A DNA stretch of 64,000 bases, from NCBI GenBank assembly GCA_002269645.1, contig NIVC01000128.1:1-64000 (forward strand). The letters are read 5' to 3'. The notes beneath the pieces were generated by a model. The model saw only the letters and a list, made by a program, of their open reading frames with translations. It was not told the origin of the DNA and did no database searches. Shown in pieces: positions 14,634 through 40,693 of the stretch (positions are counted from its first letter, which is position 1; every line of letters begins with the position of its first letter). Origin of the DNA: Macrostomum lignano (taxonomy: Eukaryota). The position numbers and the translations under genes were made by a program.

Positions 14634-17600
14634 ATGCCACCTGAAGTTTCACCTAAAATGAGGCATCTTGAGTCAGAGGCCTCTTTATATAAGTTGGATG
14701 CTCTAGATAGCAACTGGTATGCCATTGTGATTCCAGGAAATCCAGGAATAGTGGGTTACTATGAAGAATTCATGCACTCTCTCTGGACAAAACTGGATGG
14801 CCAAGTCCATGTCTGGGCTCTCAGCCATCGTGGCCATGGGGACTCCTTCAATTCTAGCAAGAAGTTTTCTCTTGCTAAGCAAGTTGAACACAAAGTAAAA
14901 TTCCTGGAAACTGCTCTACCTGAAGATGTAAGACGTTAAGCCTCACTTTGCTCTGCTATCCAAGTTATTTTGTATGTAATCACCCAGTCTTCTTAGGGGA
15001 CTTTCTCAACCCCAAATGACTGGCCTTGAAAATATCTCCAGACTCCCAGATCCCCATGTTACAGGAAGCTCAGTATCCCAGATCCCCATGTTACAGGAAG
15101 CTCAGTATCCCAGATCCCTATAATTTAAGAGCCCCGGTCTCCCAGATCCCCATACTCCAGGTGCCACAGTCTCCCAGATCCCATACTTCAGGAGTCCCGG
15201 TCTCCCAGATCCCCATGCTTCAGGAGTCCCGGTCTCCCAAATCCCCATGCTTCAGGAGTCCCAGTCTCTCAGATCCCATACTTCAGTAGCCTCAGTCTCC
15301 CAGATCCCCATGCTTCAGGGGTCCCGGTCTCCCAGATCCCCATACTTCAGGAGTCCCGGTCTCCCAGATCCCCATACTTCAGGCAGGAGCCCCAGTCTCC
15401 AAGATCCCCATACGTCAGGAGCCCCAGTGTCCCAGATCCCCATACTTCAGTAGCCTCAGTCTCCCAGATCCCCATACTTCAGGAGCCCCAGTCTCCCAGA
15501 TCCCCATACTTCAGGAGCCCCAGTCTCCCAGATCCCCATACTTCAGAAGCCCCAGTCTCCCAGATCCCTATACTTCAGGAGCCCCAGTGTCCCAGATCCC
15601 CATACTTCAGGAGCCCCAGTGTCCCAGATCCCCATACTTCAGGAGCCCCAGTGTCCCAGATCCCCATACTTCAGGAGCCCCAGTGTCCCAGATCCCCATA
15701 CTTTAGGAGCCCCAGTGTCCCAGATCCCCATACTTCAGGAGCCCCAGTCTCCAAGATCCCCATACTTCAGGAGCCCCAGTCTCCAAGATCCCCATACTTC
15801 AGGAGCCCCAGTCTCCCAGATCCCTATACTTCAGGAGCCCCAGTGTCCCAGATCCCCATACTTCAGGAGCCCCAGTGTCCCAGATCCCCATACTTCAGGA
15901 GCCCCAGTCTCCAAGATCCCCATACTTCAGGAGCCCCAGTCTCCCAGATCCCCATACTTCAGGAGCCCCAGTGTCCCAGATCCCCATACTTCAGGAGCCC
16001 CAGTGTCCCAGATCCCCATACTTCAGGAGCCCCAGTGTCCCAGATCCCCATACTTCAGGAGCCCCAGTGTCCCAGATCCCCATACTTCAGGAGCCCCAGT
16101 CTCCAAGATCCCCATACTTCAGGAGCCCCAGTCTCCCAGATCCCCATACTTCAGGAGCCCCAGTGTCCCAGATCCCCATACTTCAGGAGCCCCAGTCTCC
16201 AAGATCCCCATACTTCAGGAGCCCCAGTCTCCAAGATCCCCATACTTCAGGAGCCCCAGTGTCCCAGATCCCCATACTTCAGGAGCCCCAGTGTCCCAGA
16301 TCCCCATACTTCAGGAGCCCCAGTGTCCCAGATCCCCATACTTTAGGAGCCCCAGTGTCCCAGATCCCCATACTTCAGGAGCCCCAGTCTCCAAGATCCC
16401 CATACTTCAGGAGCCCCAGTCTCCAAGATCCCCATACTTCAGGAGCCCCAGTCTCCCAGATCCCTATACTTCAGGAGCCCCAGTGTCCCAGATCCCCATA
16501 CTTCAGGAGCCCCAGTGTCCCAGATCCCCATACTTCAGGAGCCCCAGTCTCCCAGATCCCCATACTTCAGGAGCCCCAGTGTCCCAGATCCCCATACTTC
16601 AGGAGCCCCAGTGTCCCAGATCCCCATACTTCAGGAGCCCCAGTGTCCCAGATCCCCATACTTCAGGAGCCCCAGTGTCCCAGATCCCCATACTTCAGGA
16701 GCCCCAGTCTCCAAGATCCCCATACTTCAGGAGCCCCAGTCTCCCAGATCCCCATACTTCAGGAGCCCCAGTGTCCCAGATCCCCATACTTCAGGAGCCC
16801 CAGTCTCCAAGATCCCCATACTTCAGGAGCCCCAGTCTCCAAGATCCCCATACTTCAGGAGCCCCAGTGTCCCAGATCCCCATACTTCAGGATCCCCAGT
16901 CTCCAAGATCCCCATACTTCAGGAGCCCCAGTCTCCCAGATCCCCATACTTCAGGAGCCCCAGTGTCCAAGATCCCCATACTTCAGGAGCCCCAGTGTCC
17001 CAGATCCCCATACTTCAGGAGCCCCAGTGTCCCAGATCCCCATACTTCAGGAGCCCCAGTGTCCCAGATCCCCATTCTTCAGGAGCCCCAGTCTCCCAGA
17101 TCCCCATACTTCAGGAGCCCCAGTCTCCCAGATCCCCATACTTCAGGAGCCCCAGTGTCCCAGATCCCCATACTTCAGGAGCCCCAGTGTCCCAGATCCC
17201 CATACTTCAGGAGCCCCAGTCTCCCAGATCCCTATACTTCAGGAGCCCCAGTGTCCCAGATCCCCATACTTCAGGAGCCCCAGTGTCCCAGATCCCCATA
17301 CTTCAGGAGCCCCAGTCTCCAAGATCCCCATACTTCAGGAGCCCCAGTGTCCCAGATCCCCATACTTCAGGAGCCCCAGTGTCTGATGCACGGCATTGCA
17401 GGCAAAAATGGTGCTGATCGGGCACTCAATCGGGTGCCAGATGATCCTGGAGCTGCTTCGTCGCCAAGCCCGCGGCACCGACAGGGTGGCCCGCTGCCTG
17501 CTGCTGTTCCCCACCATCGAGCGGATGCGCGAATCGCCGCAGGGCCGCATCGTCGCTCCGCTGCTGTCGCTGGCACCGCTCCGCTGGCTGGCGATGGCGC

Positions 17601-18019
17601 TGGTCGCCCTGCTGTCTCTGCTGATTCCTCTGGCCTGGCGCCGGGGCTTCGCCGCGCGCTGTCTCAGCGCAGTTGGCCATTCTAACGCCAACCCGGGCGC
17701 CGTGATGGCCACTGAGCGCCTGTTGCTATCGCCTAGCGTCCTTGGCAACGTGCTGTACATGGCGCACACGGAGATGCAGGACGTCCGCCAGCCGGACTTG
17801 GCCACCATCAGGCAGCACAGCCAGCGGATCCTGCTGTACTACGGCGCTGACGATCACTGGTGTCCCACCGAATACTTCGCTGACATGCGTCGCAGCTGCC
17901 CGGAGGTCGACGCCAGACTAGACGAAGGCGACGTTGCCCACGCCTTCGTGCTGGAGCATTCAGTTGAAATGGCCGATCTGTGCGCCGGCTGGGTGCGCGA
18001 GTGCACGACTGCGCGCTGA
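14634..18019 (+). CDS. LDAH: Lipid droplet-associated hydrolase (DUF2305 alpha/beta hydrolase), 2 exons, 303 aa
   Basis: Exon 1 (14634-14927) contains IPGNPG..YY..F and SHRGH, FSL..QVEHK. A phase-0 GT-AG intron joins it to exon 2 (17402-18019), which has the nucleophile motif IGHSIG, LLFPTIERM, YYGADDHWCP and HAFVL. Confidence 0.93.
15030..17383. repeat. 32-bp minisatellite GTCCCAGATCCCCATACTTCAGGAGCCCCAGT (~73 copies) filling the LDAH intron
   Basis: Period 32, with a degenerate 5' edge. Generates the spurious 231-688 aa ORFs. Confidence 0.97.
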
Positions 18020-18895: not shown

Positions 18896-19299
18896 GGTTC
18901 CCACCTGTCCAAATATTCTCTGGTGGATTGCCACCCCTTCCCCAATTCCCAAATAGAAAACGGACATTCCTATTTACCTTGATTTCATTGATTTACCGAC
19001 TGGAACAAATTGACAAAATATGTTCTAGTTGATTTATTTGTTTCTGTAACAGTGTGCTACTTGCGAACGAAGTAGTCTGTATCGATTTTTTAAACTGATA
19101 TTCTTTGTCGTAAGTAGTTGAATTTTGATCTAACTAGCATACGATACGAGACAATATACTCGTACCCAATTTAACTGATTTTTATTCAATAATTTTCTAG
19201 TCTAATTGATCATTGTAAACAATTGATTCGCTGTTAAAATGATCAGGGTTTTGATTTATTTTTATTTACGTAGATATAAATTCGAAATCAACCCTAAAT

Positions 19300-19925
19300 T
19301 CACCAATCTGAATACAGAATTCACCAATCTGAATACAGAACTCACCAATCTGAATACAGAACTCACCAATCTGAATACAGAATTCACCAATGTGAATACA
19401 GAATTCCCCGATCTGAATACAGAATTCACCAATGTGAATACAGAATTCACCAATCTGAATACAGAATTCCCCGATCTGAATACAGAATTCACCAATGTGA
19501 ATACAGAATTCACCAATGTGAATACAGAATTCACCAATCTGAATACAGAATTCACCAATCTGAATACAGAATTCACCAATGTGAATACAGAAATTCACCA
19601 ATCTGAATACAGAATTCCCCGATCTGAATACAGAATTCACCAATGTGAATACAGAATTCACCAATCTGAATACAGAATTCACCAATGTGAATACAGAAAT
19701 TCACCAATCTGAATACAGAATTCACCAATCTGAATACAGAAATTCACCAATCTGAATACAGAAATTCACCAATCTGAATACAGAATTCACCAATGTGAAT
19801 ACAGAATTCACCAATCTGAATACAGAAATTCACCAATCTGAATACAGAAATTCACCAATCTGAATACAGAATTCACCAATCTGAATACAGAATTCCCCGA
19901 TCTGAATACAGAATTCACCAATCTA
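19300..19925. repeat. 21-bp minisatellite TTCACCAATCTGAATACAGAA
   Basis: About 30 copies. Source of the TNLNTEF ORFs. Confidence 0.95.
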
Positions 19926-20487
19926 AATAAAGATCTCACCAACTCATTACCTAATTTAACAAACGGTTACCTAAGAGTGACGGGGAAAAGCGGTGTTAAA
20001 TTTAGCGACCACAGCTGCTCACAGTGTGAGCACACACGCAGTGGTTCCATGAGCACGGCTACTTAATTGCAGTCGCGCGCTTGAACAAAATTCTTCGTAA
20101 AAAGCGTTTCGTTTAATTAGCATAAATTATGCAGCGGCTAGCAAATAGTGTCTAGAGAGAAGGAACAGATTTCTCCACTTTTCGTGCGGGCCAGCTTGTA
20201 ACTGGGCTGTGCACTTTGGACCTCCACCTAGCCTAGCTCTTCAGAGCTGCCCGCTAGTTAATATTACATGAGACAGTCTGGGAGGGGGGCTGCTGCGGTT
20301 CGACTGGGCACCGGATCTATTGATAACTCGCGAATTGATTGATTGATGGACTGCCGGAGCTGTGAGAGCCAAATGACATTGGTAAAAATGGTCTGTGTGG
20401 GCCATTCTTGCTCTGTTTCTGGCTAAATAGTAGGGACCCTTTTAGGAGGAACTGTCAGTCTTATCCTCAGTGTTAGGGAATAGTCAG

Positions 20488-21210
20488 TGGGGAATCCTCA
20501 ATGTGGGGAATTCTCGATGTAGGGAAACCTCGATGTGGGGAATCCTCAGCGTGGGGGAATAGTTAGTGAGGATAATCTTCTGGGTGGGGGAATCCTCAGT
20601 GAAGGGAATCCTCAGTGTGAGGAATCCTCAGTGAGGGGAATCCTCAGTGAGGGGAATCCTCATTGTGGAGAATCCTCAGTGTGGGGAATCCTCAGTGTGG
20701 GGAATCCTCAGTGTGGGAATCCTCGGTGTGGGAATCCTCGGTGTGGGAAATCCTCAGTGTGGGGAATCCTCATTGTGGGGAATCCTCAGTGTGGGGAATC
20801 CTTATTGTGGGGAATCCTTATTGTGGAGAATCCTCAGTGTGGGGAATCCTTATTGTGGAGAATCCTCAGTGTGGGGAATCCTCATTGTGGGAATCCTCAG
20901 TGTGGGGAATCCTCAGTGTGGGGAATCCTCATTGTGGAGAATCCTCAGTGTGGGGAATCCTTATTGTGGAGAATCCTCAGTGTGGAGAATCCTCAGTGTG
21001 GGGAATCCTTATTGTGGAGAATCCTCAGTGTGGGGAATCCTCAGTGTGGGAATCCTCGGTGTGGGGAATCCTCAGTGTGGGGAATCCTCATTGTGGAGAA
21101 TCCTCAGTGTGGGGAATCCTTATTGTGGAGAATCCTCAGTGTGGGGAATCCTCAGTGTGTGGAATCTTCAGTGTGGAGAATCCTCGGAGGGGGGAGTCCT
21201 CAATGTGGAG
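20488..21210. repeat. ~16-17 bp minisatellite GGGGAATCCTCAGTGT
   Basis: Tandem degenerate copies. Confidence 0.93.
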
Positions 21211-21627
21211 CATCCCCGAGATGACTCTTCAGACTTCTCACTCAAACCTTTAGTACTGCTTTGGCAGAAAAGTCAACATTGAACAATAATTATATAGATA
21301 TTATTTTATATTTAATAAGACTCCGTATTTTTGCGGCAGTGACGGCTTTCCCCTGCTTGTCAATGAGTTGTTAAGCTTTATTTCTCTGTGGAATTGTTGC
21401 GGACACTTGATGGCAGGTGTAACTGTGGTTACTGCTGGGGGTTTACACTTAGTTCGCGAAGGACATTCAAAGCGCTTGGAACAAAAGTGAGATTAATATA
21501 AGTGGGCTGATTCTTAAAATATTATTTTTTATCATCTCTGACATGCGTCTTATGGTCGGGTCCAATGTTAATGTTGCTGGCGTCATCCAGGCCATCCGTT
21601 TGTCCTCGGCTTTCAGCTCCTGGTTGC

Positions 21628-24600
21628 TCACTCTTCATCAGCGTCAGCCCTGCGCCTGGAGAGGGGCGGGAATTTAGTGGGATATTTGATGCTTCGGATA
21701 GGAATCGAACCCGGGGTACCCGGACGCGTTGCCTGTACAGCAGCTTGTTGCTAACCGCTGCCGAATTTGCTTAACCTTGCCGTGCCGGCAGCAAATCATA
21801 GAATTTGATTCTCAACGCAAGATTAATTGCAGACTAAAATTATTTGTCTATTCAGTCTTTAATATTCTAAAATAGACCAAATAAACTCTTCTTAGTTGAT
21901 GAAGCCGAAAGCAATTGAATTAATCCCGACAGCAGACCCGCTCTGTGACTGGGGCGTGACTAAAATTCATTCGGCGATCTGAATGAAAAAGAGAACGATA
22001 AAAAGTCTTCCTTGAGCTGACTGGGACTTCCCTGCCGCCGCAGGGAAGTCCGCATTTGCAGCGCTTAACTTTCTAATGCAGTGCGCGCATTAGCCAAATA
22101 TGGTGCACTCGTTGCCACAGAATTGAAAAAAGACGCAATGGATGAGTCGCGCTCTGGCTTATAGATGAGTGGAATACACATCAGCATGACGTCTCCCATT
22201 CTGACCTCATGTTCCTAGCTTTATGACCTCATGCTCCTAGCTCATGACCTCATACTCCTACATAATGAAATCATAATTCTACCTCATGACCTCATGACCT
22301 CATACTCTTACGTCATGAAGTCATACTCCTACCTCATGACCTCATACTCCTACATCATGAAGTCATACTCCTACATCATGAAGTCATACTCCTACATCAT
22401 GAAGTCATACTCCTACATCATGAAGTCATAGTCCTACATCATGAAGTCACACTCCTACATCATGAAGTCATACTCCTACATCATGAAGTCATACTTCTAC
22501 ATCATGAAGTCATACTCCTACATCATGAAGTCATACTCCTACATCATGAAGTCATACTCCTACATCACGAAGTCATACTCCTACCTCATGACCTCATACA
22601 CCTACATTATGAAGTCATACTCCAACCTCATGACCTCATGATCTCATACTCCTACATCATGAAGTCATACTCCTACATCATGAGGTCATACTCCTACATC
22701 ATGAAGTCATACTCCTACATCATGAAGTCATACTCCTACATCATGAAGTCATACTCCTACATCATGAAGTCATACTCCTACATCATGAAGTCATACTCCT
22801 ACATCATGAAGTCATACTCCTACATCATGAAGTCATACTCCTACATCATGAAGTCATACTCCTACATCATGAAGTCATACTCCTACATCATGAAGTATCT
22901 CATGACCTCGTGCTTTTATTTTTTGACTTCATGGCCCCTTAATATTTCCTCATAACTTCAAAACCAGTTAAATACTGTAATGTATCAGAATTTACCAAGC
23001 TTTAAAATTTACACATTGTGAAAAAATCGCAGAGAGTGAATTCACCCCATATTTTTTGGCCTCTGTGTTGCAGCATCTGTCTTACAAATTATCAAACTCA
23101 CTTCTTCCAGTCGTACGCCATCGGGGCACTGAAGCGCTTCCTAAAAATTTCAAATTAGAAAGACTAATCAGGCGGCGAAGCATTTAACTACTAACAGATA
23201 GGGATAATTACTCTCGCCTTTTATTCATTATTCTGTCTTGTTTCTGGTAATTAGCAACATAAAAGTAAGATTAAAAATATTTTTTAAATTACGCACTTCC
23301 AATCGTAGGCCTGGGGAGCAGAGAACCGCTTCCTATAATTAGAATTTGTATAGGGAATTATAATTGCTTAATTGCAATGCATAATTTATTAAAAATGCGC
23401 ATCACAATTGCAGTTGTAAGCTTGGGCTCACTTCCAGTCGAATGCTTGAGGAGCGGAGAACCGCTTCCTGAAATTAAGTGAAGAAATTTATTGATATGAG
23501 ATGATGGATGCAGATTACTCGTAATGGCCGCTGTGACGCTTATCAAGTGATGGACCCTGGGGTCATGAACTTTCAAGAAGTCATGACCTATCTGCTTTTT
23601 TCTTTCTGCATTGCTGCAGAAATATCTTCCACTGCTGTCCCCCGGTGCTATTCCCACTTCTAGCCTCGATGCTGTCCCTGGTGCTGTCCCTGGTGTTGTC
23701 CCCGGTTTTGTCCCCGGTGTTGTTCCCATGCTGTCCCCGGTGTTGTCCCCGGTGTTGTCCCCGGTGTTGTCCCTGATGTTGTCCCCGGTGTTGTCCCCGG
23801 TGTTGTCCCCGGTGTTGTCCCTGATGTTGTCCCCGGTGTTGTCCCCGGTGCTGTCCCCGGTGTTGTCCCTGATGTTGTCCCTGGTGTTGTCCCTGGTGTT
23901 GTCCCTGGTGTTTTCCCTGGTGCTGTCCCGGTGTTGTCCCTGATGTTGTCCCCGGTGTTGTCCCTGGTGTTGTCCCTGGTGCTGTCCCCGGTGTCGTCCC
24001 TGGTGTTGTCCCCGGTGTTGTCCCTGGTGTTTTCCCTGGTGCTGTCCCGGTGTTGTCCCTGATGTTGTCCCCGGTGTTGCCCCCGGTGCTGTCCCCGTCG
24101 TTGCCCCCCGTGTTGCTCCCTCTGCTGTCCTCGGTGTTGTCCCTGGAGCTGTCCCTGGTACTATCCCGGTTGCTGTCCCTGGTGTTGTCCCTGGTGCTGC
24201 CCCTGGTGTTGTCCCTTGTGCTGTCCCCGGTGCTATCTCTATTCTAGCCAAGGAGTTCGACAAGCGGCAGCAGTTCAGTAGTCCATGAACTGGCCAAACT
24301 CACCTCCAGTCAAAAGCCTGCGGAGCGGAGAATCGCTTTCTAAAATATTAAAAAAGTGTATCAGAGTGTTTTTATTAAAGGCATGGCTTACTACTGATTC
24401 TATAATTATATTTGCACCTATTTATTAATTAGCGAGCCAACTCACCTCCAATCGAATGCCTGTGGAGCGGAGAACCGCTTCCTGAAAATGCGACAAAACC
24501 AAGGCAATAACAAAGGCAGCATTGAGTTCTGCAAGCAATCAAGCAGATTTTCACCGCATCTGGAAAGCGCGCTACTCACCTCCAGTCGAACGCCTGAGGG

Positions 24601-27600
24601 GCCGAGAATCGCTTCCTAGACGACAAAAAGAATAAAGGAAAGAAAGTTAATTTTGCACTGCTGTTTAGTTGCCAAGCATCAGGGGCGAAGCCCCAGAGCA
24701 GTTTAAAGCCACTTACTTCCAGTCGAACGCCTGGGGAGCGGAGAACCGCTTGCTGCAGGGTGCAGAGAGGCAGTGCCAGTGTGAGGTGCTAGGAGGCTGA
24801 ATTCGTCTTTAGGTCTGCTTTTGAACTACTGTCTATTCTAAATTCCTTTCGGCAAAATCCCACTCACCGCCTTTGTAGGCTAGATTTGCAATCCATTCTA
24901 TTCCTTTATCCATGTAGGCTAGATTTGCAATCCATTCTATTCCTTTATCCATGTAGGCTAGATCAGCAATCCATTCTATCCTTTATCCATGTAGGCTAGA
25001 TTAGCAATCCATTCTATCCTTTATCCATGTAGGCTAGATTAGCAATCCACTCTATTCCTTAGTCAATGTAGGCTAGATTAGCAATCCATTCTATTCCTTT
25101 ATCCATGTAGGCTAGATTAGCAATCCATTCTATTCCTTTATCCATGTAGGCTAGATTAGCAATCCATTCAATTCTTTATCCGTGTAGGCTAGATTAGCAA
25201 TCCATTCTATACTTTATCCATGTAGGCTAGATTAGCAATCCACTCTAATCCTTTATCCGTGTAGGCTAGATTAGCAATCCACTCTAATCCTTTATCCGTG
25301 TAGGCTAGATTTGCAATCCACTCTAATCCTTTATCTGTGTAGGCTAGATTAGCAATTCATTCTATCCTTTATCCATGTAGGCTAGATTAGCAATCCACTC
25401 TATTCCTTAATCAATGTAGGCTAGATTAGCAATCCATTCTATTCCTTTATCCATGTAGGCTAGATTAGCAATCCATTCTATTCCTTTATCCATGCAGGCT
25501 AGATTAGCAATCCATTCAATTCTTTATCCGTGTAGGCTAGATTAGCAATCCATTCTATTCCTTTATCCATGTAGGCTAGATTAGCAATCCATTCAATTCC
25601 TTTATCCATGTAGGCTAGATTAGCAATCCATTCTATTCCTTTATCCATGTAGGCTAGATTAGCAATCCATTCAATTCTTTATCCGTGTAGGCTAGATTAG
25701 CAATCCATTCTATTCCTTTATCCATGTAGGCTAGATTAGCAATCCATTCTACTCCTTTATCCGTGTAGGCTAGATTAGCAATCCATTCTATTCCTTTATC
25801 CATGTAGGCTAGATTAGCAATCCATTCAATTCTTTATCCGTGTTGGCTAGATTTGCAATCCATTCAATTCTTTATCCGTGTAGGCTAGATTAGCAATCCA
25901 TTCTATCCTTTATCTGTGTAGGCTAGATTAGCAATTCATTCTACTCCTTTATCCATGTAGGCTAGATTAGCAATCCATTCTATACTTTATCCATGTAGGC
26001 TAGATTAGCAATTCATTCTATCCTTTATCCATGTAGGCTAGATTAGCAATCCACTCTATTCCTTAGTCAATGTAGGCTAGATTAGCAATCCATTCTATTC
26101 CTTTATCCATGTAGGCTAGATTTGCAATCCATTCTATTCCTTTATCCATGTAGGCTAGATTAGCAATCCATTCAATTCTTTATCCGTGTAGGCTAGATTA
26201 GCAATCCATTCTATACTTTATCCATGTAGGCTAGATTAGCAATCCATTCTATCCTTTATCCATGTAGGCTAGATTAGCAATCCATTCTATCCTTTATCTG
26301 TGTACGCTAGATTAGCAATCCATTCTATCCTTTATCTGTGTACGCTAGATTAGCAATCCATTCTATCCTTTATCCATGTAGGCTAGATTAGCAATCCATT
26401 CTACTCCTTTATCCGTGTAGGCTAGATTAGCAATCCATCCTATTCCTTTATCCATGTAGGCTAGATTAGCAATCCATTCAATTCTTTATCCGTGTTGGCT
26501 AGATTTGCAATCCATTCTATTCCTTTATCCATGTAGGCTAGATTTGCAATCCATTCTATTCCTTATCCATGTAGGCTAGATTAGCAATCCATTCAATTCT
26601 TTATCCGTGTAGGCTAGATTAGCAATCCATTCTATACTTTATCCATGTAGGCTAGATTAGCAATCCATTCTATCCTTTATCCATGTAGGCTAGATTAGCA
26701 ATCCATTCTATCCTTTATCTGTGTACGCTAGATTAGCAATCCATTCTATCCTTTATCCATGTAGGCTAGATTAGCAATCCATTCTACTCCTTTATCCGTG
26801 TAGGCTAGATTAGCAATCCATCCTATTCCTTTATCCATGTAGGCTAGATTAGCAATCCATTCAATTCTTTATCCGTGTTGGCTAGATTAGCAATCCATTC
26901 TATACTTTATCCATGTAGGCTAGATTTGCAATCCATTCTATTCCTTTATCCATGTAGGCTAGATTAGCAATCCATTCTATTCCTTTATCCATGTAGGCTA
27001 GATTAGCAATTCATTCTACTCCTTTATCCATGTAGGCTAGATTAGCAATCCATTCTATACTTTATCCATGTAGGCTAGATTAGCAATCCACTCTAATCCT
27101 TTATCCGTGTAGGCTAGATTAGCAATCCACTCTAATCCTTTATCCGTGTAGGCTAGATTTGCAATCCACTCTAATCCTTTATCTGTGTAGGCTAGATTAG
27201 CAATTCATTCTATCCTTTATCCATGTAGGCTAGATTAGCAATCCACTCTATTCCTTAATCAATGTAGGCTAGATTAGCAATCCATTCTATTCCTTTATCC
27301 ATGTAGGCTAGATTAGCAATCCATTCTATTCCTTTATCCATGCAGGCTAGATTAGCAATCCATTCAATTCTTTATCCGTGTAGGCTAGATTAGCAATCCA
27401 TTCTATTCCTTTATCCATGTAGGCTAGATTAGCAATCCATTCAATTCCTTTATCCATGTAGGCTAGATTAGCAATCCATTCTATTCCTTTATCCATGTAG
27501 GCTAGATTAGCAATCCATTCAATTCTTTATCCGTGTAGGCTAGATTAGCAATCCATTCTATTCCTTTATCCATGTAGGCTAGATTAGCAATCCATTCTAC

Positions 27601-30600
27601 TCCTTTATCCGTGTAGGCTAGATTAGCAATCCATTCTATTCCTTTATCCATGTAGGCTAGATTAGCAATCCATTCAATTCTTTATCCGTGTTGGCTAGAT
27701 TTGCAATCCATTCAATTCTTTATCCGTGTAGGCTAGATTAGCAATCCATTCTATCCTTTATCCATGTAGGCTAGATTAGCAATCCATTCTATCCTTTATC
27801 TGTGTACGCTAGATTAGCAATCCATTCTATCCTTTATCTGTGTACGCTAGATTAGCAATCCATTCTATCCTTTATCCATGTAGGCTAGATTAGCAATCCA
27901 TTCTACTCCTTTATCCGTGTAGGCTAGATTAGCAATCCATTCTATTCCTTTATCCATGTAGGCTAGATTAGCAATCCATTCTACTCCTTTATCCGTGTAG
28001 GCTAGATTAGCAATCCATCCTATTCCTTTATCCATGTAGGCTAGATTAGCAATCCATTCAATTCTTTATCCGTGTTGGCTAGATTTGCAATCCATTCTAT
28101 TCCTTATCCATGTAGGCTAGATTAGCAATCCATTCAATTCTTTATCCGTGTAGGCTAGATTAGCAATCCATTCTATACTTTATCCATGTAGGCTAGATTA
28201 GCAATCCATTCTATCCTTTATCCATGTAGGCTAGATTAGCAATCCATTCTATCCTTTATCTGTGTACGCTAGATTAGCAATCCATTCTATCCTTTATCCA
28301 TGTAGGCTAGATTAGCAATCCATTCTACTCCTTTATCCGTGTAGGCTAGATTAGCAATCCATCCTATTCCTTTATCCATGTAGGCTAGATTAGCAATCCA
28401 TTCAATTCTTTATCCGTGTTGGCTAGATTAGCAATCCATTCTATACTTTATCCATGTAGGCTAGATTTGCAATCCATTCTATTCCTTTATCCATGTAGGC
28501 TAGATCAGCAATCCATTCTATCCTTTATCCATGTAGGCTAGATTAGCAATCCATTCTATCCTTTATCCATGTAGGCTAGATTAGCAATCCATTCTATCCT
28601 TTATCTGTGTACGCTAGATTAGCAATCCATTCTATCCTTTATCCATGTAGGCTAGATTAGCAATCCATTCTATCCTTTATCCATGTAGGCTAGATTAGCA
28701 ATCCATTCTATCCTTTATCTGTGTACGCTAGATTAGCAATCCATTCTATACTTTATCCATGTAGGCTAGATTAGCAATCCATCCTATTCCTTTATCCATG
28801 TAGGCTAGATTAGCAATCCATTCAATTCTTTATCCATGTAGGCTAGATTAGCAATCCATTCAATTCTTTATCCGTGTTGGCTAGATTTGCAATCCATTCT
28901 ATTCATTTATCCATGTAGGCTAGATTAGCAATCCATTGTACTCCTTTATCCGTGTAGGCTAGATTAGCAATCCATCCTATTCCTTTATCCATGTAGGCTA
29001 GATTAGCAATCCATTCTATCCTTTATCTATGTAGGCTAGATTTGCAATCCATTCTATTCATTTATCCATGTAGGCTAGATTAGCAATCCATCCTATTCCT
29101 TTATCCATGTAGGCTAGATTAGCAATCCATTCAATTCTTTATCCGTGTTGGCTAGATTTGCAATCCATTCTATTCCTTTATCCGTGTAGGCTAGATTAGC
29201 AATCCATTCTACTCCTTTATCCGTGTAGGCTAGATTAGCAATTCATTCTACTCCTTTATCCGTCTAGGCTAGAATAGCAATCCATTCTACTCCTTTATCC
29301 GTGTAGGCTAGATTAGCAATCCATTCTATTCCTTTATCCATGTAGGCTAGATTAGCAATCCATTCTACACCTTTATCCGTCTAGGCTAGAATAGTAATTC
29401 ACTTTATTAATCTATCAACTTTTACTTTTACACTGCTAATCTTTAAGACAAAACAAAATCGATATAAGTGGTCGCGCCAGTTAGCGACTGAGCAGTTGAG
29501 CACGAGACTCAATTGAAACTGAGCAACTGGAACAGGCTGAAGTCACCGTTGCCTTACCGCCACTCAAAGGCCTGGGGAGCGGAGAAGCGCTTCCTACAAA
29601 AGCAATGGGGGTGGAGGTGCATTGTGAGGCTGGCGTCACGCCCCTCTTCAACTAAGCTCCCGGGCGGATGAGTTGCTGTTTTCACCCTGTCTTTCCCCAG
29701 TCCCCCAACATCCGCCCGATTTCAAAGCTCAGTTCCTCCTTTTTTGAGTTCTCAATAAACGAACTTCGAGGCACTGAAAGCGCTCACTTTTTCCAGTCGA
29801 ACGCCTGTGGAGCCGAGAATCGCCTGTGGAATGTTTTTTAGTATAGGGATTTTATATACATTTTTACACCTTACAGCGGACTGTAAGCAGTTTCCACATC
29901 CATTTCCTTCTTGCTTTGGGGGAGGCAATTCCAAGCTGTTTCAGGACTATCAAATTCTCAATCAAGCCTTTGAAATGAATCTGCCTTCCCGCCCCCTATC
30001 TTAGCTAAAATGCTTTCCAATCCAACAATATCAAATTCGCTATGCTCAGTTTTTTAACCTTTGAAAATTTTAAAGCCTAAATTTTTGCTAATTGGGTTTC
30101 TTGCAACAGAACTGCTCCGCTTACTTGGCCCTCTGCGCGGCGTGTTGCGAGGCGCTTCTGAAAATGGGGGCGGAGGTGCAATATGCTCGTATGCTTGAAT
30201 TGAATTATTGATAAATACATGCAATATTGCAGAGTATACTAGCAAAGCCAGCAGATCCTATGGTTGTGCTTCTTGTGCAGTGCTGCCAGCAGGGGATGAG
30301 CTTGAGCTCTCAGCTTTATCTAGTCAGGGCTGCTAACCGCTGCCAACTATGCTTAACTTGCTAGCAATCAAATCGAAAAAATATACAAGAAATGCATAAG
30401 AAATAGGAATTAGTAACAATGGAACAAAACTGGTTTGATTAAATAGCAGGGATTTTTTTGAAAACTTTAAGGAATTTTCCTCCAAGAAGCTCAGGACCTG
30501 ATGCCAGCGTGAACTTTTACCGGGGCCTTGCGTGCGCCCAGCTAGCTATTCCACTTCAGCTGGGGAATCCGACTCTATGACTTGAAAGCCCGGATGCTCC

Positions 30601-32120
30601 GCAAACAGCCAGTGATAAAGAGAAATTTCTGAACCGGCGAAAGCACTAAAAACTTTTTTGGTCACTGAAAGCCTTTATTTAGAATGATTCACTCGCGAAC
30701 GAACATTGTGAACTTATTGAAAGCACATACGAGTTGTTATAATCGATAAGATCTGAGAATCAACACGAATGCAAATCACCCCCTCCCTTCCCCATGCCAA
30801 TCACTCACCCCAGCCACCCCTTCCCTTCCCCATGCCAATCACTCACCCCAGCCACCCCTTCCCTTCCCCATGCCAAACACTCACCCCAGCCACCCCCTCC
30901 CTTCCCCATGCCAATCACTCACCCCAGCCACCCCTCCCTTTCCTATGCCAAACACTTACCAGCCACCCCTCCCTTCCCCATGCCAAACACTCACCCCAGC
31001 CACCCCTCCCTTCCCCATGCCAAACACTTACCCAGCCACCCCTCCCTTCCCCATGCCAAACACTTACCCAGCCACCCCTCCCTTCCCCATGCCAAACACT
31101 CACCCCAGCCACTCCCTCCCTTCCCTATGCCAAACACTTACCCAGCCACCCCCTCCCTTCCCTATGCCAAACACTTACCCCAGCCACCCCCTCCCTTCCC
31201 ATGCCAAACACTCACCCCAGCCACCCCTCCCTTCCCTATGCCAAACACTTACCCAGCCACCCCTCCCTTCCCTATGCCAAACACTTACCCCAGCCACCCC
31301 CTCCCTTCCCATGCCAAACACTCACCCCAGCCACCCCTCCCTTCCCTATGCCAAACACTTACCCAGCCACCCCTCCCTTCCCATGCCAAACACTCACCCC
31401 AGCCACTCCCTCCCTTCCCTATGCCAAACACTTACCCAGCCACCCCCTCCCTTCCCTATGCCAAACACTTACCCCAGCCACCCCCTCCCTTCCCCATGCC
31501 AAACACTCACCCCAGCCACTCCCTCCCTTCCCTATGCCAAACACTTACCCAGCCACCCCCTCCCTTCCCTATGCCAAACACTTACCCAGCCACCCCCTCC
31601 CTTCCCCATGCCAAACACTCACCCCAGCCACCCCCTCCCTTCCCCATGCCAAACACTTACCCAGCCACCCCTCCCTTCCCCATGCCAAACACTCACCCCA
31701 GCCACTCCCTCCCTTCCCTATGCCAATCACTCACCCCAGCCACCCCCTCCCTTCCCCATGCCAATCACTCACCCCAGCCACCCCTCCCTTCCCCATGCCA
31801 AACACTCACCCCAGCCACCCCCTCCCTTCCCCATGCCAAACACTTACCCAGCCACCCCTCCCTTCCCCATGCCAAACACTCACCCCAGCCACTCCCTCCC
31901 TTCCCTATGCCAATCACTCACCCCAGCCACCCCCTCCCTTCCCCATGCCAAACACTCACCCCAGCCACCCCTCCCTTCCCCATGCCAATCACTCACCCCG
32001 CAGCCGCCCTCTGCCCCAATTCCCAGCTCACTTCTTGGCCGGATCAGCCTCGGTCTGGCAGACTAGCAGCGCGACCAGAGCTGCGAATACCAGCGCTTGG
32101 ATCAGGCGTTGATGACTCAT
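21628..32120 (-). CDS. Micro-exon neuropeptide precursor, 12 coding exons, 158 aa: signal peptide + 9 basic-flanked FSAP(Q/M)A(F/Y)(D/E)W nonapeptides
   Basis: Exons: 32120-32032 (MSHQRLIQALVFAALVALLVCQTEADPAK), 30157-30125, 29823-29788, 29593-29558, 24752-24717, 24615-24580, 24481-24446, 24339-24304, 23467-23432, 23332-23297, 23140-23102, 21655-21628 (RRADADEE*). Every junction is AG/GT and phase 2, the 477 nt splice into one open frame, and variation among peptide exons is mostly synonymous. Confidence 0.9.
21695..21800 (-). mobile_element. Degenerate tRNA-derived SINE head (candidate)
   Basis: Minus strand has an A-box-like GGCAGCGGTTAGC and a B-box GGGTTCGATTCC. The GCTAACCGCTGCC..GCTTAAC segment recurs at ~30330-30357. 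Confidence 0.4.
22215..22905. repeat. 21-bp minisatellite CATCATGAAGTCATACTCCTA in the last intron of the neuropeptide gene
   Basis: About 32 copies. Source of the IMKSYSY ORFs. Confidence 0.95.
23655..24232. repeat. 12-bp minisatellite TGTTGTCCC(C/T)GG in a neuropeptide intron
   Basis: Tandem degenerate copies between exons 24304 and 23467. Confidence 0.93.
24874..29392. repeat. 38-39 bp satellite TGTAGGCTAGATTAGCAATCCATTCTATTCCTTTATCCA (~116 copies), intronic
   Basis: Period 39 read directly (24913 to 24952). Contains an internal 1848-bp duplication. Confidence 0.97.
30775..31998. repeat. ~37-bp C-rich minisatellite in neuropeptide intron 1
   Basis: Unit CTCACCCCAGCCACCCCTCCCTTCCCCATGCCAAACA, about 33 copies. 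Confidence 0.95.
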
Positions 32121-33811
32121 TATCGGAGCAATTTAAAGCTTTCCTTTTTGGCGTCGTAGAGATGTAAGAGCGCCTGCGGGATTTTCAGTAAGTTGGGCAG
32201 TCAGAGTATCATTTTTTAATCTGGCTTAGCATAATATAATATTAGAGGAGCCCTGAGGGAATCGCACAATAACCTCCTGGCCAACTTTCACGCACGCAAG
32301 CCCCAAAGGAGTGTGCCCGCTTAGGGAATCATGGGTCGTGGCTCTGCCCTCTTATCTGAAGGGCTGACTTACACACAAAATTAGTTGCGGCTTTGGTATA
32401 ATAAAAAAGTCAATAGATTGCAATCGAAAAAAGTCGGTTGGTTCAGCCGCGAGATTCTCCTCTGACCCGCATTTCTTTCATATTCGAGAAATTGATCAAG
32501 TTAAAAATCTGCAGCCCGAATCTTGCCGCCTATAGCTATAGGCTGAAGTCTGGTGCGGCCGGGACTCGCCGAGTGCCGAATGGGGAATTAAGCGAATTCA
32601 ATCAGTTTGACTGGCTTGCGGGATTCTATAAAAGAGAGGGATGAGGAGGAGGAGGGGCTCCTTTACTCTCATATCGGTGCAGATAATGTTTCCGCGCGGC
32701 TGATCGCAGCTGCCGAGGCTGTTGGTGCTGTGGGATCTGGGAAGGAAGGGGCTGCGAGCGAACCCGAGATAACAGCTCATTACTGCTGGGCCATTCTCTA
32801 TCTGTTCAGCTTAACCTTTCTCATAGCCGACCTAGTTTTTCTTCAGCTGGGAGTTATAGCAAAATTGGGTCGGGGCGCGCCGAGAGCGGGTCATGCATGG
32901 AGGAGCTCGGATGTCCTCCTCGCTGTTGATGAAGTTTCTGCAAAAGCCACACAGCCCAACCAGTCTCTTCTGTGCCCGCCATCCCCACCCCGCACTCAGG
33001 CCCACGCCGCATCCGGGGCTGGTGAATGCGCCTGACCAGAAGGACCCCCTCTGGCCCGCTAATTCTCAGCCAGTTTTATCATTTTCTCAATGCACCCCAC
33101 TTCCGGCCACAAAACTTCTTCTTTCCAAACTTTCTAAGGACACCGACCGGATTGTGAGGAGAGGAGATCGGGACAGACAAGACTGAGACTGCCCCCCTCT
33201 GTCAAAAATCCCATATGTTTGATTTCTTCCTCATTCTTCCCTTGGCACACTCTTGATGAGGCCGCCGCGGAGACTGGCAGGACAAACACAAAAGCTAACA
33301 GAAAGCAGAGCTACAGAAATGTTCAACCAAGACGGCGAATCATCTCATTGTCGTCTGCCGCGCGGCATTGTTGGCAGAATCCGCCGGAGCAGATGCAGCT
33401 TCCTGCCGCTCTCGCACTCGTTGAGTTCGGGGAGGGCAAGTTTTTATGTTTATTTTATCCGACTATGAATGAATTCTCCTATTCCGGTCTCAGCTACGCG
33501 ACAGCGATTGTTCCAGCCTGGCGGAAGCGAATTCAAATAAATTCGAGCGAGACAAAGTTTATCCGCGTGGCCCCACTTCCGAGATTGCTCCGCTGCGTGC
33601 GTTCAATACAAGCGATGATTCTGAAGCGACCGAGAGGCGCATTTGCAGTGAGGCTGGGCGTCTCGCACTGCCCACCCGCGAATGCGGAGTCACGCCTCAG
33701 ATTGCCGATTGCTGCTCAGGCTGATCTGAGTGGGGCCTCGGAGTGAGCTGCCATGCTAATCATTGCATATGCTTTGCATATTCAGGTTGGCTGTGGAGTC
33801 ACTGAGTGGAG

Positions 33812-34544
<733 letters not shown>

Positions 34545-38428: not shown

Positions 38429-39074
38429 CCTTTTTTGGCTGAATCATTACATACCGGATATATTTACATACCGGATATAGTGTTGCTCTTGCAAATAGGC
38501 TCACTCAACATATCGGTAGACAAATAGCTTACTCACCTGAGCAGCGTGTCAGTAGGCGAGCGAAGGCAGATTTCGAGTTCGGCCGCGTCTGAATGTCCCG
38601 GATCTCGCTCGGCGAAGGCGGCTCCGGCCTGTCGGGCCCGGCCTTCTTAATATGGGGATTTCGGCCAGCCAATGGGAGTCGGGCCCGGCTAGAGACGGCT
38701 GCTTTCGCAGGGCTGGCTCTGACATTTTCGGCTTAATTACAAGCCGCTTAAAAAAACTTGAGTTTCCAACTCGAGTGGGCCAGCCCGCCTCCTGCAGTTG
38801 ACAGAGTATCCGTTTTTTGTTAAATTCAATTTCCCTTTTTCAACGGCACTAAGATAAAATAATTGAATTTTTTTAGTGACAAAACTGCCGACTTGCGCTG
38901 AAAATTTAGCAACTGCTGTGGACAGCTTTGAGATGCTCGAAGCAGTTGAGATTTGACAGAATTTCATCTGGCTTTTTGCCGGCCAGCTACCCGCCTCCAA
39001 CTCCTTCTGATCCCCGTCTTCCCTTCATCTTCATCTGCTACTTGCATCTCATTGTTTCTCGTCTTCCTCTCTCG

Positions 39075-39850
39075 TTCATCTCCCTCTCTCTGATATCCCC
39101 TTCTCTCATCTCCGCTCTTCTCTTATCTCCCCCTTCTCTCATCTCCCCCTTCTCTCATCTCCCCCTTCTCTCATCTCCGCCCTTCTCTCATCTCCCCCTT
39201 CTCTCATCTCCCCCTTCTCTCATCTCCCCCTTCTCTCATCTCCGCCCTTCTCCCATCTCCGCTCTTCTCTCATCTCCGCCCTTCTCTCATCTCCGCCCTT
39301 CTCTCATCTCCACCCTTCTCTCATCTCCCCCTTCTCTCATCTCCCCCTTCTCTTATCTCCCCTTCTCTATTCTCCCCCTTCTCTCATCTCCCCCTTCTCT
39401 CATCTCCGCCCTTCTCTCATCTCCCCCCTTATCTCATCTCCCCCCTTCTCTCATCTCCAGACCCGTTCTCTCACCTTCCCTCTCTCTCATTTCCCCTCTG
39501 TCATCTCCCTCTCTCATCTCAATCTCTGTCATCTCCCTCTCTCATCTCAATCTCTCTCATCTCCCTCTCTCATCTCAATCTCTCTCATCTCCCTCTCTCA
39601 TCTCAATCTCTCTCATCTCCCTCTCTCATCTCAATCTCTCTCATCTCCCTCTCTCATCTCAATCTCTCTCATCTCCCTCTCTCATCTCAATCTCTGTCAT
39701 CTCCCTCTCTCATCTCAATCTCTGTCATCTCCCTCTCTCATCTCAATCTCTGTCATCTCCCTCTCTCATCTCAATCTCTGTCATCTCCCTCTCTCATCTC
39801 AATCTCTGTCATCTCCCTTTCTCATCTCAATCTCTCTCATCTCCCTCTTC
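39075..39850. repeat. CT-rich minisatellites (TCTCTCATCTCCCC-type, then TCTCTCATCTCAATC-type)
   Basis: Two adjacent pyrimidine-rich degenerate arrays. Confidence 0.9.
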
Positions 39851-40693
39851 CTGACCCTCTATACGTGTTAAGCATCGCACAACCGCAATGCCTGCTTGAA
39901 GATTCTCAGCAATCTGCTGAATTGGCTCCAAATCTGTCCCGGCCAAGAACCCGACTCCCAACCCTTGGGGAGATAAATGATAAATAAAATTCAGCCAGCG
40001 GAAATCCGAACTGCGTCAGAAATTTCGCCTCACCAATTGTTGTCTAGTCACGTTCCAGCTTAGCAGAGAAAAAAGGCGCGTTATGAAACTCGAGCACTCT
40101 GTTTAAACTTCATCAATTTTTCGCCCAGTGGATCGTTTTCCATTGCTGGAAATTTCCACCTTGTGTTGGAGCGCGGGCCCCCATAAACATGTCAACTAAC
40201 CAGGCGTTCTCAATTGTGTATTTGCTTTCTGTTTATTCATAGAGATTTCTCACTGAGCGAGAAGCGACTGGCAGCTCAGTTTCATGCCGCATGACTGGGC
40301 TTGGGGATGCCATGGCCGGGCTGCGACTTAATAAACCGGTCCAGTGGAGCCCAATTTCAAATCACAGAGTATAGCGGGGCCTCGGGGACTGACAAATGAC
40401 TCTCGGGTCTTGGGAATTTCGGGCCATTCGACTCGAACAAAAAATGAGCTGGGGGCGCAGTTATTGCTTTCATTTCTTTCTCTGCTCCGGCCCGAGTGAC
40501 CCACCGAGCTTTTGATTGATAGCGCTGGGGTTCCCTTGTTTCTGTGAGTCTCCTCTGAGCTCGCCTTTGGGTAAGCAATGATAAGCTGCTCGTTGCCCCG
40601 TGTCCTGTTGTGGACGCTGCTGCTATAGTATTCTTGTCCCAAGACTCCCAATCTACTCCAAAACCAGTTGTAGCTGCGGTTTTTCATACCGAC

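What the first reader, a model, noticed from the sequence alone, without database searches (positions are those of the whole stretch)
21628..32120. Hidden micro-exon neuropeptide gene: one peptide per 36-nt exon
Nine dispersed ~36-nt motifs at 23.1-24.8 kb and 29.6-29.8 kb are minus-strand AG/GT-bounded exons. Spliced to a signal-peptide exon (32120-32032), a 33-nt linker exon and a terminal exon, they give a 158-aa prepropeptide: MSHQRLIQALVFAALVALLVCQTEA-DPAKKSASQHAAQRAKR-FSAPQAFDW-KKKR-FSAPQAFEW-RKR-FSAPQAFDW-KKR-FSAPQAFDW-RKR-FSAPQAFDW-RKR-FSAPQAFDW-RKR-FSAPQAFDW-KKR-FSAPQAYDW-KKR-FSAPMAYDW-KKRR-ADADEE*. The 477 coding nt span 10.5 kb, and no exon is long enough for the ORF track. A signal peptide, basic convertase sites and repeated peptides are the standard prohormone architecture. 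A one-peptide-per-micro-exon layout resembles schistosome MEG genes, and gene predictors are likely to miss it.
Basis: partly seen in the sequence, partly recalled or inferred. Interest (0 to 1): 0.95.

Follow-up and report, generated by a model that had tools for sequence, protein, structure and literature searches.

The report
Flatworm peptide-precursor gene split into micro-exons

Summary
Nine FSAPxA[FY][DE]W motifs lie on the minus strand. Each sits in a 36-nt (one 39-nt) AG/GT-bounded exon, and all introns are in phase 2.

- **Organism:** the window is Macrostomum lignano scaffold NIVC01000128.1, bases 1-64000.
- **Selection:** the peptide cores show pS 0.69 against pN 0.07. The introns cannot be aligned with each other and are swollen by minisatellites.
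- **Paralogues:** two M. lignano genes (PAA48327.1, PAA83548.1) have the same layout of signal peptide, [KR]KR-F..P..YDW units and acidic tail. Their eight 36-nt units form one uninterrupted exon. The proposed splicing rebuilds that layout exactly.
- **Database status:** the exact protein is absent from about 15 billion deposited proteins. Older UniProt models of this locus are chimeric, truncated or frameshifted.

Best reading: a real gene for a secreted multi-copy peptide precursor, probably neuropeptide-like and not amidated, with an architecture like schistosome micro-exon genes.

I had no transcript, expression or peptide data. Splicing and neuronal function are therefore inferred. I rate this a new variant of a known kind, of moderate interest.

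The parts
32032..32120 (-). Exon 1, coding part (89 nt). The ATG is at 32118-32120. It encodes the signal peptide MSHQRLIQALVFAALVALLVCQTEA plus DPAK and ends in phase 2 before GTGAGC.
   Evidence: An in-frame TAA lies 5 codons upstream, at 32133-32135. The hydrophobic core spans residues 6-20, with T at -3 and A at -1.
32121..32173 (-). Possible 5' UTR behind an AG acceptor (cccgcag|GCGCTC, AG at 32174-32175). This could be a trans-splice or 5'-UTR acceptor. Inferred only.
   Evidence: Sequence read. M. lignano mRNAs are often SL trans-spliced (PMC5730564).
30125..30157 (-). Exon 2, 33 nt, phase 2-2. It encodes the pro-region K-SASQHAAQRA-K.
   Evidence: Acceptor ttttcag, donor GTAAGC. Its similarity to the peptide unit is not significant (p about 0.06).
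29788..29823 (-). Exon 3, 36 nt: (K)R-FSAPQAFDW-KK.
29558..29593 (-). Exon 4, 36 nt: KR-FSAPQAFEW-R.
24717..24752 (-). Exon 5, 36 nt: KR-FSAPQAFDW-K.
24580..24615 (-). Exon 6, 36 nt: KR-FSAPQAFDW-R.
24446..24481 (-). Exon 7, 36 nt: KR-FSAPQAFDW-R.
24304..24339 (-). Exon 8, 36 nt: KR-FSAPQAFDW-R.
23432..23467 (-). Exon 9, 36 nt: KR-FSAPQAFDW-K.
23297..23332 (-). Exon 10, 36 nt: KR-FSAPQAYDW-K. It has the weakest donor (GTGCGT).
23102..23140 (-). Exon 11, 39 nt: KR-FSAPMAYDW-KK. Its Ser codon is AGT rather than TCN. All old gene models skip this exon.
21628..21655 (-). Exon 12, coding part (28 nt): (K)RR-ADADEE-TGA. The stop codon is at 21628-21630. The 3' UTR end is not determined.
   Evidence: Acceptor cccgcccctctccag.
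30777..31999 (.). Minisatellite of 38 bp x 33 that fills intron 1. Each unit carries GGTGAGT on the gene's strand.
24874..29398 (.). Minisatellite of 39 bp x 117 (4.5 kb). It accounts for the 4805-nt intron that splits the peptide exons into groups of 2 and 7.
23673..24232 (.). Tandem repeat of 12 bp x 47 in intron 8. It is the source of the spurious 301-aa ORF at 23358-24263.
22292..22896 (.). Tandem repeat of 21 bp x 29 in the last intron.

Best explanation
This is a real 12-exon, minus-strand protein-coding gene of the free-living flatworm Macrostomum lignano (NIVC01000128.1:21628-32120). It encodes a 158-aa secreted multi-copy peptide precursor.

Shown on sequence:
- Exon 1 gives a signal peptide.
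- Ten symmetrical phase-2 micro-exons (33, 8x36 and 39 nt) make up 75% of the CDS.
- Nine of them each carry one '[KR]KR + nonapeptide' unit.
- A short terminal exon adds RR-ADADEE-stop.

Inferred processing:
- The signal peptide is cleaved after Ala25.
- A prohormone convertase cuts at the KR/KKR/RKR/KKKR sites, and a carboxypeptidase trims the basic residues.
- This releases 6x FSAPQAFDW plus one each of FSAPQAFEW, FSAPQAYDW and FSAPMAYDW.
- The peptides keep free C-termini, because no Gly precedes the basic sites and so there is no amidation.
- They most likely act as neuropeptide-like or hormone-like signals.

Inferred origin: the architecture most likely arose by tandem duplication of an 'exon plus roughly 100-nt intron' unit. 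The intron lies inside the first basic codon (TGG A[AG]|G AAG CGN). The duplications are old, since synonymous sites are near saturation and the introns are unalignable. Several introns were later inflated by minisatellites. Because every internal exon is symmetrical, skipping any of them would keep the frame and change only the number of peptide copies.
For: - **Gene model:** all 11 introns are GT..AG and in the same phase, and the CDS is 477 nt with no frame break.
- **Not chance:** the splice-flanked 36-mers are far beyond chance, and the acceptors have pyrimidine tracts.
- **Selection:** among the nine cores, 7 of 12 variable columns are third codon positions. The cores are 81% identical while the flanks are 29-35% identical. 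Nei-Gojobori counts give pS 0.69 and pN 0.07, and pN is 0.013 among the first seven copies. The Ser codon switch TCN to AGT in exon 11 is also silent.
- **Copy number:** there are exactly nine copies and no decayed ones.
- **Relatives:** true relatives are found only in M. lignano.
- **Paralogues:** PAA48327.1 and PAA83548.1 sit at loci whose ORFs are uninterrupted, with 8 x [KR]KR-FSAPGTYDW or F[AV]Q[AP]GTYDW at the same 36-nt period. They are collinear with the spliced product from signal peptide to acidic ...EE tail. Their GenBank models come from a transcript-based annotation (PMC5730564), so the family is expressed.
- **Signal peptide:** the hydrophobic core spans residues 6-20, with a T-E-A|D cleavage context.
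Against: - I had no transcript, EST or peptide evidence for this locus. Two protein searches and an exact look-up found no deposited product joining exon 1, the 33-nt exon and exon 3.
- Older ab initio models of the locus (A0A1I8IJ07, A0A1I8HD77, A0A1I8FID0) join the exons differently. They skip exon 11 and read the terminal exon in another frame, which is open for about 45 codons.
- There is no amidation signal, no match to any Pfam family and no similar peptide in the planarian prohormone set. The 'neuropeptide' label therefore rests on architecture alone.
- Exon 10 has a weak donor (GTGCGT), and exon 3 has a weak pyrimidine tract (0.5).
Confidence: 0.72

Rival explanations
1. The gene and its splicing are real, but the peptides are not neuronal signals. 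They would be products of a gland or other regulated secretory cell, for example prostate or seminal fluid, adhesive, pharyngeal or epidermal glands, or a pheromone or defensive peptide. They would be processed by furin-type or PC-type proteases as yeast alpha-factor or amphibian skin peptides are.
For: Signal peptide, basic sites and repeated peptides occur in any multi-copy secreted peptide precursor. There is no amidation Gly and no homology to a named neuropeptide family. Schistosome genes with this architecture are expressed in glands and epithelia (PMC4350168).
Against: The peptides are short (9 aa), acidic (pI about 4) and strictly conserved across ancient copies. That profile fits a receptor ligand better than an antimicrobial or structural product. 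Non-amidated neuropeptide-like peptides are common in other invertebrates (my own knowledge, for example C. elegans NLPs).
Confidence: 0.2
2. The locus is a dead relic. An ancestral single-exon array like the paralogues was broken up by minisatellite and other insertions and is no longer expressed as a protein.
For: The paralogues are contiguous arrays. The interruptions here are rich in tandem repeats. No correct product is deposited.
Against: The interruptions fall at the identical position and phase in all nine units. Each carries a GT donor and a pyrimidine tract plus AG acceptor. There is no frameshift or stop in any unit. pN/pS is 0.10 with synonymous sites near saturation, so the copies stayed under protein-level selection long after they separated. 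Five introns are only 98-156 nt and contain no repeats.
Confidence: 0.04
3. The exons belong to the 3' end of the large upstream minus-strand gene (38.5-57.2 kb), as in UniProt A0A1I8IJ07. They would not form a separate secreted-peptide gene.
For: P0003 (1378 aa) maps at about 100% identity from 57177 to 21525 and includes exon 1 and several peptide exons. About 7% of M. lignano transcripts are polycistronic precursors (PMC5730564).
Against: The fusion enters exon 1 through an AG inside ATGAG. It skips exons 2-4, retains intron 24616-24716, and needs a 1-nt shorter C-run in exon 10. These are typical artefacts of ab initio prediction. An in-frame TAA lies 5 codons upstream of the ATG. The paralogues are stand-alone genes that start with their own signal peptides. 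A shared primary transcript resolved by trans-splicing would still give a separate mRNA.
Confidence: 0.03

Closest known systems
M. lignano paralogues BOX15_Mlig001773g8 (PAA48327.1, FSAPGTYDW) and BOX15_Mlig017890g3/g1 and Mlig030851g1 (PAA83548.1 etc., F[AV]Q[AP]GTYDW), all annotated 'hypothetical protein'
   Same: They share the layout of signal peptide, short pro-region ending in KR, eight or nine 12-residue units ([KR]KR + F-x-x-[PA]-x-x-[FY]-[DE]-W) and an acidic tail ending in E. The unit is 36 nt in all of them.
   Different: The paralogues' arrays lie in one uninterrupted exon, and their units are 94-97% identical at DNA level. Here every unit is a separate exon, the units are 81% identical with synonymous sites near saturation, and the gene spans 10.5 kb.
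Multi-copy neuropeptide precursors (FMRFamide-like or FLP, nematode NLP, flatworm npp/spp prohormones; Collins et al. 2010, PMC2953531)
   Same: It has a signal peptide and tandem copies of a short conserved peptide separated by di- or tribasic convertase sites, with spacers free to vary.
   Different: It has no C-terminal Gly, so no amidation. The peptide motif was not found in the planarian prohormone paper or its supplements or in full-text searches. The copies are split one per micro-exon. I found no precedent for that layout in the searchable literature.
Schistosome micro-exon genes (MEGs)
   Same: Both are platyhelminth genes with a signal-peptide exon followed by a run of very small symmetrical exons (here 33-39 nt, 75% of the CDS). 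The introns range from about 0.1 to 5 kb and are longest in the middle. The product is predicted to be secreted, and automatic annotation does poorly (PMC4350168; PMC10526429).
   Different: No sequence relatives were found outside M. lignano. The MEG descriptions I read report mostly ~15-bp exons and fast-evolving proteins acting at the host-parasite interface. Here the exons are tandem duplicates encoding identical convertase-flanked peptides under strong purifying selection, in a free-living species. Alternative splicing was not tested.
Vertebrate peptide-hormone genes with one peptide per exon (proglucagon: glucagon, GLP-1, GLP-2; VIP/PHM). From my own knowledge, not tested here.
   Same: Related peptides produced by exon duplication each occupy their own exon.
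   Different: Those exons are over 100 nt, few in number, and encode diverged peptides with distinct receptors. They are not nine near-identical nonapeptides on 36-nt exons.

Membership tests
Multi-copy secreted peptide (prohormone/neuropeptide) precursor | N-terminal signal peptide | tested here: met
   Tested by heuristic only, since no SignalP was available. There is Arg5 in the n-region, a hydrophobic core at residues 6-20 (Kyte-Doolittle score above 2) and a T-E-A|D cleavage context. The paralogues also start with hydrophobic leaders.
Multi-copy secreted peptide (prohormone/neuropeptide) precursor | Repeated short peptides flanked by di- or multibasic convertase sites | tested here: met
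   There are nine nonapeptides separated by KR, KKR, RKR, KKKR or KKRR.
Multi-copy secreted peptide (prohormone/neuropeptide) precursor | Peptide cores conserved under purifying selection | tested here: met
   pS is 0.69 against pN 0.07 among the nine cores, and the flanking introns are unalignable.
Multi-copy secreted peptide (prohormone/neuropeptide) precursor | C-terminal Gly as amidation donor (common but not obligatory) | tested here: not met
   Every unit ends W-[KR] with no Gly. The predicted peptides have free carboxyl ends.
Multi-copy secreted peptide (prohormone/neuropeptide) precursor | Expression in neurons or endocrine cells and detection of the processed peptides | not testable with these tools
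   No RNA-seq, in situ or mass-spectrometry data were available.
Micro-exon gene (MEG) architecture as defined for schistosomes | Most of the coding region made of very small symmetrical exons | tested here: met
   Ten internal exons of 33, 8x36 and 39 nt are all multiples of 3 and all phase 2-2. They make up 360 of 477 coding nt, or 75%. The definition is from PMC4350168 and PMC10526429.
Micro-exon gene (MEG) architecture as defined for schistosomes | Product has a signal peptide and is secreted or membrane-anchored | tested here: met
   Tested by heuristic only.
Micro-exon gene (MEG) architecture as defined for schistosomes | Protein variants generated by alternative skipping of micro-exons | not testable with these tools
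   The frame permits skipping of any internal exon, but there are no transcript data.
Micro-exon gene (MEG) architecture as defined for schistosomes | Sequence membership of one of the described MEG protein families | tested here: not met
   HMMER against 1.84 billion representative proteins gave true relatives only in M. lignano. There was no Pfam match. The gene is therefore MEG-like in architecture but not a member of a MEG family.
M. lignano F-x-x-[PA]-x-x-[FY]-[DE]-W peptide family (unnamed) | Shared nonapeptide motif, 12-residue period, [KR]KR linkers and collinear precursor | tested here: met
   Against the fragment P0001, which models this locus or a near-identical copy, PAA48327.1 scores E 1.7e-17 and PAA83548.1 scores 7.5e-10. 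The alignment of the spliced 158-aa product with the two paralogues has 69% mean column identity, with F, P, D/W and KR columns invariant.
MIP / allatostatin-B (W-X6-W-amide) | N-terminal Trp, and C-terminal Trp-amide from a W-G-basic sequence | tested here: not met
   The peptides start with Phe and there is no Gly after Trp.

The most novel reading that the evidence does not exclude
A basal, free-living flatworm has a gene with true MEG-type architecture whose origin can still be read. A conventional single-exon multi-copy prohormone, like its paralogues, acquired one intron at the basic linker. The exon-plus-intron unit was then amplified in tandem. The introns now insulate each copy from the unequal crossing-over or gene conversion that homogenises the intronless paralogues. 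Exon skipping may also let the animal tune peptide copy number per transcript. If so, micro-exon genes would not be an invention tied to parasitism, and there would be a concrete model for how they arise.
Probability: 0.3. Interest if true: 0.65.

Novelty: new variant of a known kind. Interest (0 to 1): 0.5.

Why it matters
1. It adds a missing gene, and with its paralogues an unnamed lineage-specific peptide family, to the annotation of a regeneration and transgenesis model flatworm. The predicted products can be synthesised and tested directly.
2. I found no described case of a multi-copy peptide precursor with one copy per 36-nt exon. Intronless paralogues in the same genome provide a natural comparison for two questions: how introns and exon duplication shape repeat arrays, and how micro-exon genes originate. 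Micro-exon genes have so far been discussed mainly for parasitic flatworms.
3. It is a concrete failure case for annotation. The GenBank annotation of this assembly excluded transcripts overlapping repeat annotations (PMC5730564), which may explain why this gene is missing from it. Ab initio predictors produced chimeric or frameshifted models. The paralogues' deposited proteins have half the true number of copies.

Tried and rejected
- **Transcript-derived evidence through protein databases.** I ran two word-indexed searches with the full product and with its unique N-terminal 76 aa. I also ran an exact look-up of the 158-aa product and two exon-skip isoforms. They returned only the fragment A0A1I8HD77, or nothing. 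The word-indexed search also missed known relatives (P0003, P0005), so its silence is weak evidence.
- I used P0001 instead.
- **Is the locus annotated in GenBank?** Look-ups with nearby window ORFs found no record. The P0002 look-up identified the scaffold but reaches only window positions 51.8 kb and above.
- **Literature.** Searches for the peptide strings, the paralogue peptides, gene and UniProt ids, and one-peptide-per-exon precedents found nothing relevant. McVeigh 2009, Koziol 2016, DeMarco 2010 and Berriman 2009 are not held. I could not check whether an 'Ml-npp' with this peptide was listed there.
- **Family and RNA searches.** Pfam gave only sub-threshold noise. Rfam and ARAGORN found nothing in the window.
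- **Intron homology.** The introns show none beyond the splice signals.
- **Is the 33-nt exon a decayed peptide unit?** The similarity is not significant (p about 0.06).
- **Extra hidden exons.** A scan of the introns found only minisatellite pseudo-exons and no convincing candidate.
- **Other HMMER hits.** P0007 and P0010-P0029 are unrelated periodic repeats.
- **The 301-aa ORF at 23358-24263.** It is a 12-bp tandem repeat read through, not a gene.


Full report
**1. Observation**

A six-frame search finds nine matches to FSAPxA[FY][DE]W. All are on the minus strand, at 29793-29819, 29560-29586, 24719-24745, 24582-24608, 24448-24474, 24306-24332, 23434-23460, 23299-23325 and 23107-23133. Each is preceded by a pyrimidine-rich stretch ending in AG and followed by GT. 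Eight of the nine donors are GTRAG and one is GTGCG.

All 11 introns are in phase 2. The internal exons measure 33, 8x36 and 39 nt.

A profile built from the nine units finds exactly these nine in the 64 kb and no degenerate copies. The pattern AG + 36 nt + GTRAG occurs 11 times on the whole minus strand, and 7 of those are these exons. The acceptor-proximal 20 nt average 72% pyrimidine against 47% background.

**2. Coding constraint**

Among the nine 27-nt cores, 7 of 12 variable columns are third codon positions. The other five are confined to the last two, slightly divergent copies. Core identity is 81%, while the 40 nt on either side are 29-35% identical.

Nei-Gojobori counts give pS 0.69, near saturation, against pN 0.07. 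Among the first seven copies pN is 0.013. The introns cannot be aligned beyond their splice signals. The copies are therefore old and have been kept identical at the peptide level in exactly the proposed frame. This excludes a recently decayed array and a non-coding repeat.

**3. Why the gene spans 10.5 kb**

Five introns are 98-156 nt. The long ones are filled by tandem repeats:
- 38 bp x 33 in intron 1
- 39 bp x 117 (4.5 kb) in the 4805-nt intron
- 12 bp x 47 in intron 8
- 21 bp x 29 in the last intron

The long ORFs the mechanical ORF list shows here are these repeats read through.

**4. Organism and locus**

A neighbouring ORF (PAP2_C domain) matches a protein on GenBank contig NIVC01000128.1 of assembly GCA_002269645.1 (Mlig_3_7, Macrostomum lignano). 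The fetched locus is identical to window 51845-64000 at the same coordinates. The window is therefore bases 1-64000 of that scaffold.

**5. What databases hold**

The only word-indexed hit to the spliced product is UniProt A0A1I8HD77, a 108-aa fragment spuriously named 'Coat protein'.

An exhaustive HMMER search with that fragment against 1.84 billion representative proteins gives true relatives only in M. lignano. These fall into two groups.

(a) Older-assembly ab initio models A0A1I8IJ07, A0A1I8FID0, A0A1I8GRL6 and A0A1I8FLS6. By tblastn they map onto this very locus. A0A1I8IJ07 runs from 57177 to 21525 at about 100% identity. All are defective:
- A0A1I8IJ07 fuses a large upstream gene to the peptide gene through an AG inside ATGAG. 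It omits exons 2-4, retains intron 24616-24716, and shifts frame in exon 10.
- All of them skip exon 11.
- All of them read the terminal exon in another frame, which happens to stay open for about 45 codons.

(b) Two GenBank 'hypothetical proteins', PAA48327.1 and PAA83548.1 (with near-identical copies), which are genuine paralogues.

The exact 158-aa product and two plausible exon-skip isoforms are absent from the collection of about 15 billion proteins. The GenBank annotation of this assembly was transcript-based but removed transcripts overlapping repeat annotations (PMC5730564). That is a plausible reason for the gap (inference).

**6. The paralogues are the key comparison**

Their genomic loci (L001, L002) contain uninterrupted ORFs of 133 and 140 aa. 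Each has a signal peptide, a short pro-region ending in KR, eight units of [KR]KR-FSAPGTYDW or [KR]KR-F[AV]Q[AP]GTYDW at a 36-nt period, and a short acidic tail. The deposited 85-aa and 92-aa products have only four copies, which is a repeat-collapse artefact.

The spliced window product is collinear with them from end to end. The proposed exon junctions thus rebuild exactly the W-[KR]-K-R-F linkers and 12-residue period that are contiguous in the sister genes. This is independent support for the splicing model.

Units in the intronless paralogues are 94-97% identical at DNA level, against 81% here. This fits concerted evolution in contiguous arrays and independent evolution of intron-separated exons (inference).

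**7. Mechanism**

Shown on sequence:
- There is a hydrophobic leader (core residues 6-20, T-E-A|D).
- Basic sites flank every unit.
- No Gly precedes the basic residues.

Inferred:
- The protein enters the ER and the signal peptide is cleaved after Ala25.
- A convertase cleaves at the basic sites and a carboxypeptidase trims them.
- This gives nine non-amidated nonapeptides (6x FSAPQAFDW, plus FSAPQAFEW, FSAPQAYDW and FSAPMAYDW; MH+ 1068.48, 1082.49, 1084.47 and 1087.46), the pro-peptide SASQHAAQRA and the tail ADADEE.

The peptides are short, acidic and strictly conserved, which fits a receptor ligand. A neuronal source is the most likely, but a gland source is not excluded.

On origin, all peptide-unit introns sit at the same point in the first basic codon (TGG A[AG]|G AAG). 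The simplest history is one intron in one unit followed by tandem duplication of the exon-plus-intron unit. The alternative is intron loss or retroposition in the paralogues. It cannot be excluded without an outgroup, although no poly(A) relic follows the paralogue ORFs.

**8. Comparison with known kinds**

The gene works like a multi-copy prohormone. It meets the signal-peptide, basic-site and conservation criteria. It lacks the frequent but not obligatory amidation signal.

Architecturally it meets the published description of schistosome micro-exon genes. Most of the CDS is in very small symmetrical exons, the product has a signal peptide, the introns range from 0.1 to 5 kb, and the gene class is hard to annotate and reported as restricted to platyhelminths (PMC4350168, PMC10526429). 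It has no sequence relationship to any protein outside M. lignano. Its exons are tandem duplicates under purifying selection, and the species is free-living. So it is MEG-like in architecture but not a member of a MEG family.

It is not a MIP/allatostatin-B peptide, because it has no N-terminal Trp and no Trp-amide. No similar peptide appears in the planarian prohormone paper or its held supplements. None appears in full-text searches for the peptide strings or gene ids. Key closed-access flatworm neuropeptide papers could not be read.

**9. Verdict**

The remaining gaps are direct evidence of splicing, the site of expression, and the peptides themselves.

I rate it a new variant of a known kind: a multi-copy peptide precursor with one copy per micro-exon. 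It is of moderate interest (0.5). It corrects the annotation of a model flatworm, adds a small new peptide family, and offers a tractable case for how micro-exon genes arise. It is not a new category of system.

Noticed in passing
window 30777-31999 (intron 1, minus strand): Each 38-bp unit of the minisatellite carries a consensus 5' splice site (GGTGAGT) on the gene's strand. About 30 decoy donors therefore follow exon 1 directly, and the scan for AG..GTRAG segments lists dozens of pseudo-exons here.
   Followed up: partly
L001 8001-8402 and L002 8001-8423 (NIVC01004175.1, NIVC01000415.1): The GenBank products PAA48327.1 (85 aa) and PAA83548.1 (92 aa) contain 4 peptide copies. The genomic ORFs are uninterrupted with 8 copies (133 and 140 aa). 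The annotated introns are therefore artefacts of collapsed repeats in the transcript assembly.
   Followed up: yes
window 38539-57177 (minus) and about 49900-52686 (plus): UniProt A0A1I8IJ07 models a large minus-strand gene here, fused to the peptide gene. GenBank calls a 664-aa plus-strand gene ending at 52686 in the same stretch. The two annotations conflict in strand.
   Followed up: no
window about 21705-21790 (last intron, minus strand): There is a tRNA-like stretch with a T-arm motif GGTTCGATTCC. ARAGORN and Rfam find no tRNA. It may be a relic of a tRNA-derived SINE.
   Followed up: partly
window 21525-21668 (minus strand): An alternative frame across the terminal exon and 3' UTR stays open for about 45 codons (GLTLMKSEQPGAESRGQTDGLDDASNINIGPDHKTHVRDDKK*). 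All the older ab initio models read this frame. For a 45-codon stretch that is compatible with chance (about 0.1).
   Followed up: partly
window 20463-21208, 15619-17685, 19239-19712, 33812-34000: Further long tandem-repeat arrays lie around the gene: a 16-bp unit x 47, a repeat that translates as a proline-rich ~33-aa unit and gives a spurious 688-aa ORF, and (AGAT)n. The region is very rich in minisatellites.
   Followed up: no
window 5912-7306 (-), 14628-18019 (+), 61845-63077 (+), 59785 to beyond the window end (-): Neighbouring genes are a CCDC34-domain ORF, exons of an alpha/beta-hydrolase-like gene, a PAP2_C gene resembling sphingomyelin synthase (410 aa, annotated in GenBank) and a protein kinase gene on the opposite strand that overlaps it.
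   Followed up: partly
UniProt A0A1I8HD77 (P0001): This fragment carries an FSAPHAFDW unit (Q to H) and HQTH instead of HKTH in the tail. It may therefore come from a second, near-identical copy (homeologue or allele) of the gene in the partly duplicated M. lignano genome. Its UniProt name 'Coat protein' is spurious.
   Followed up: no
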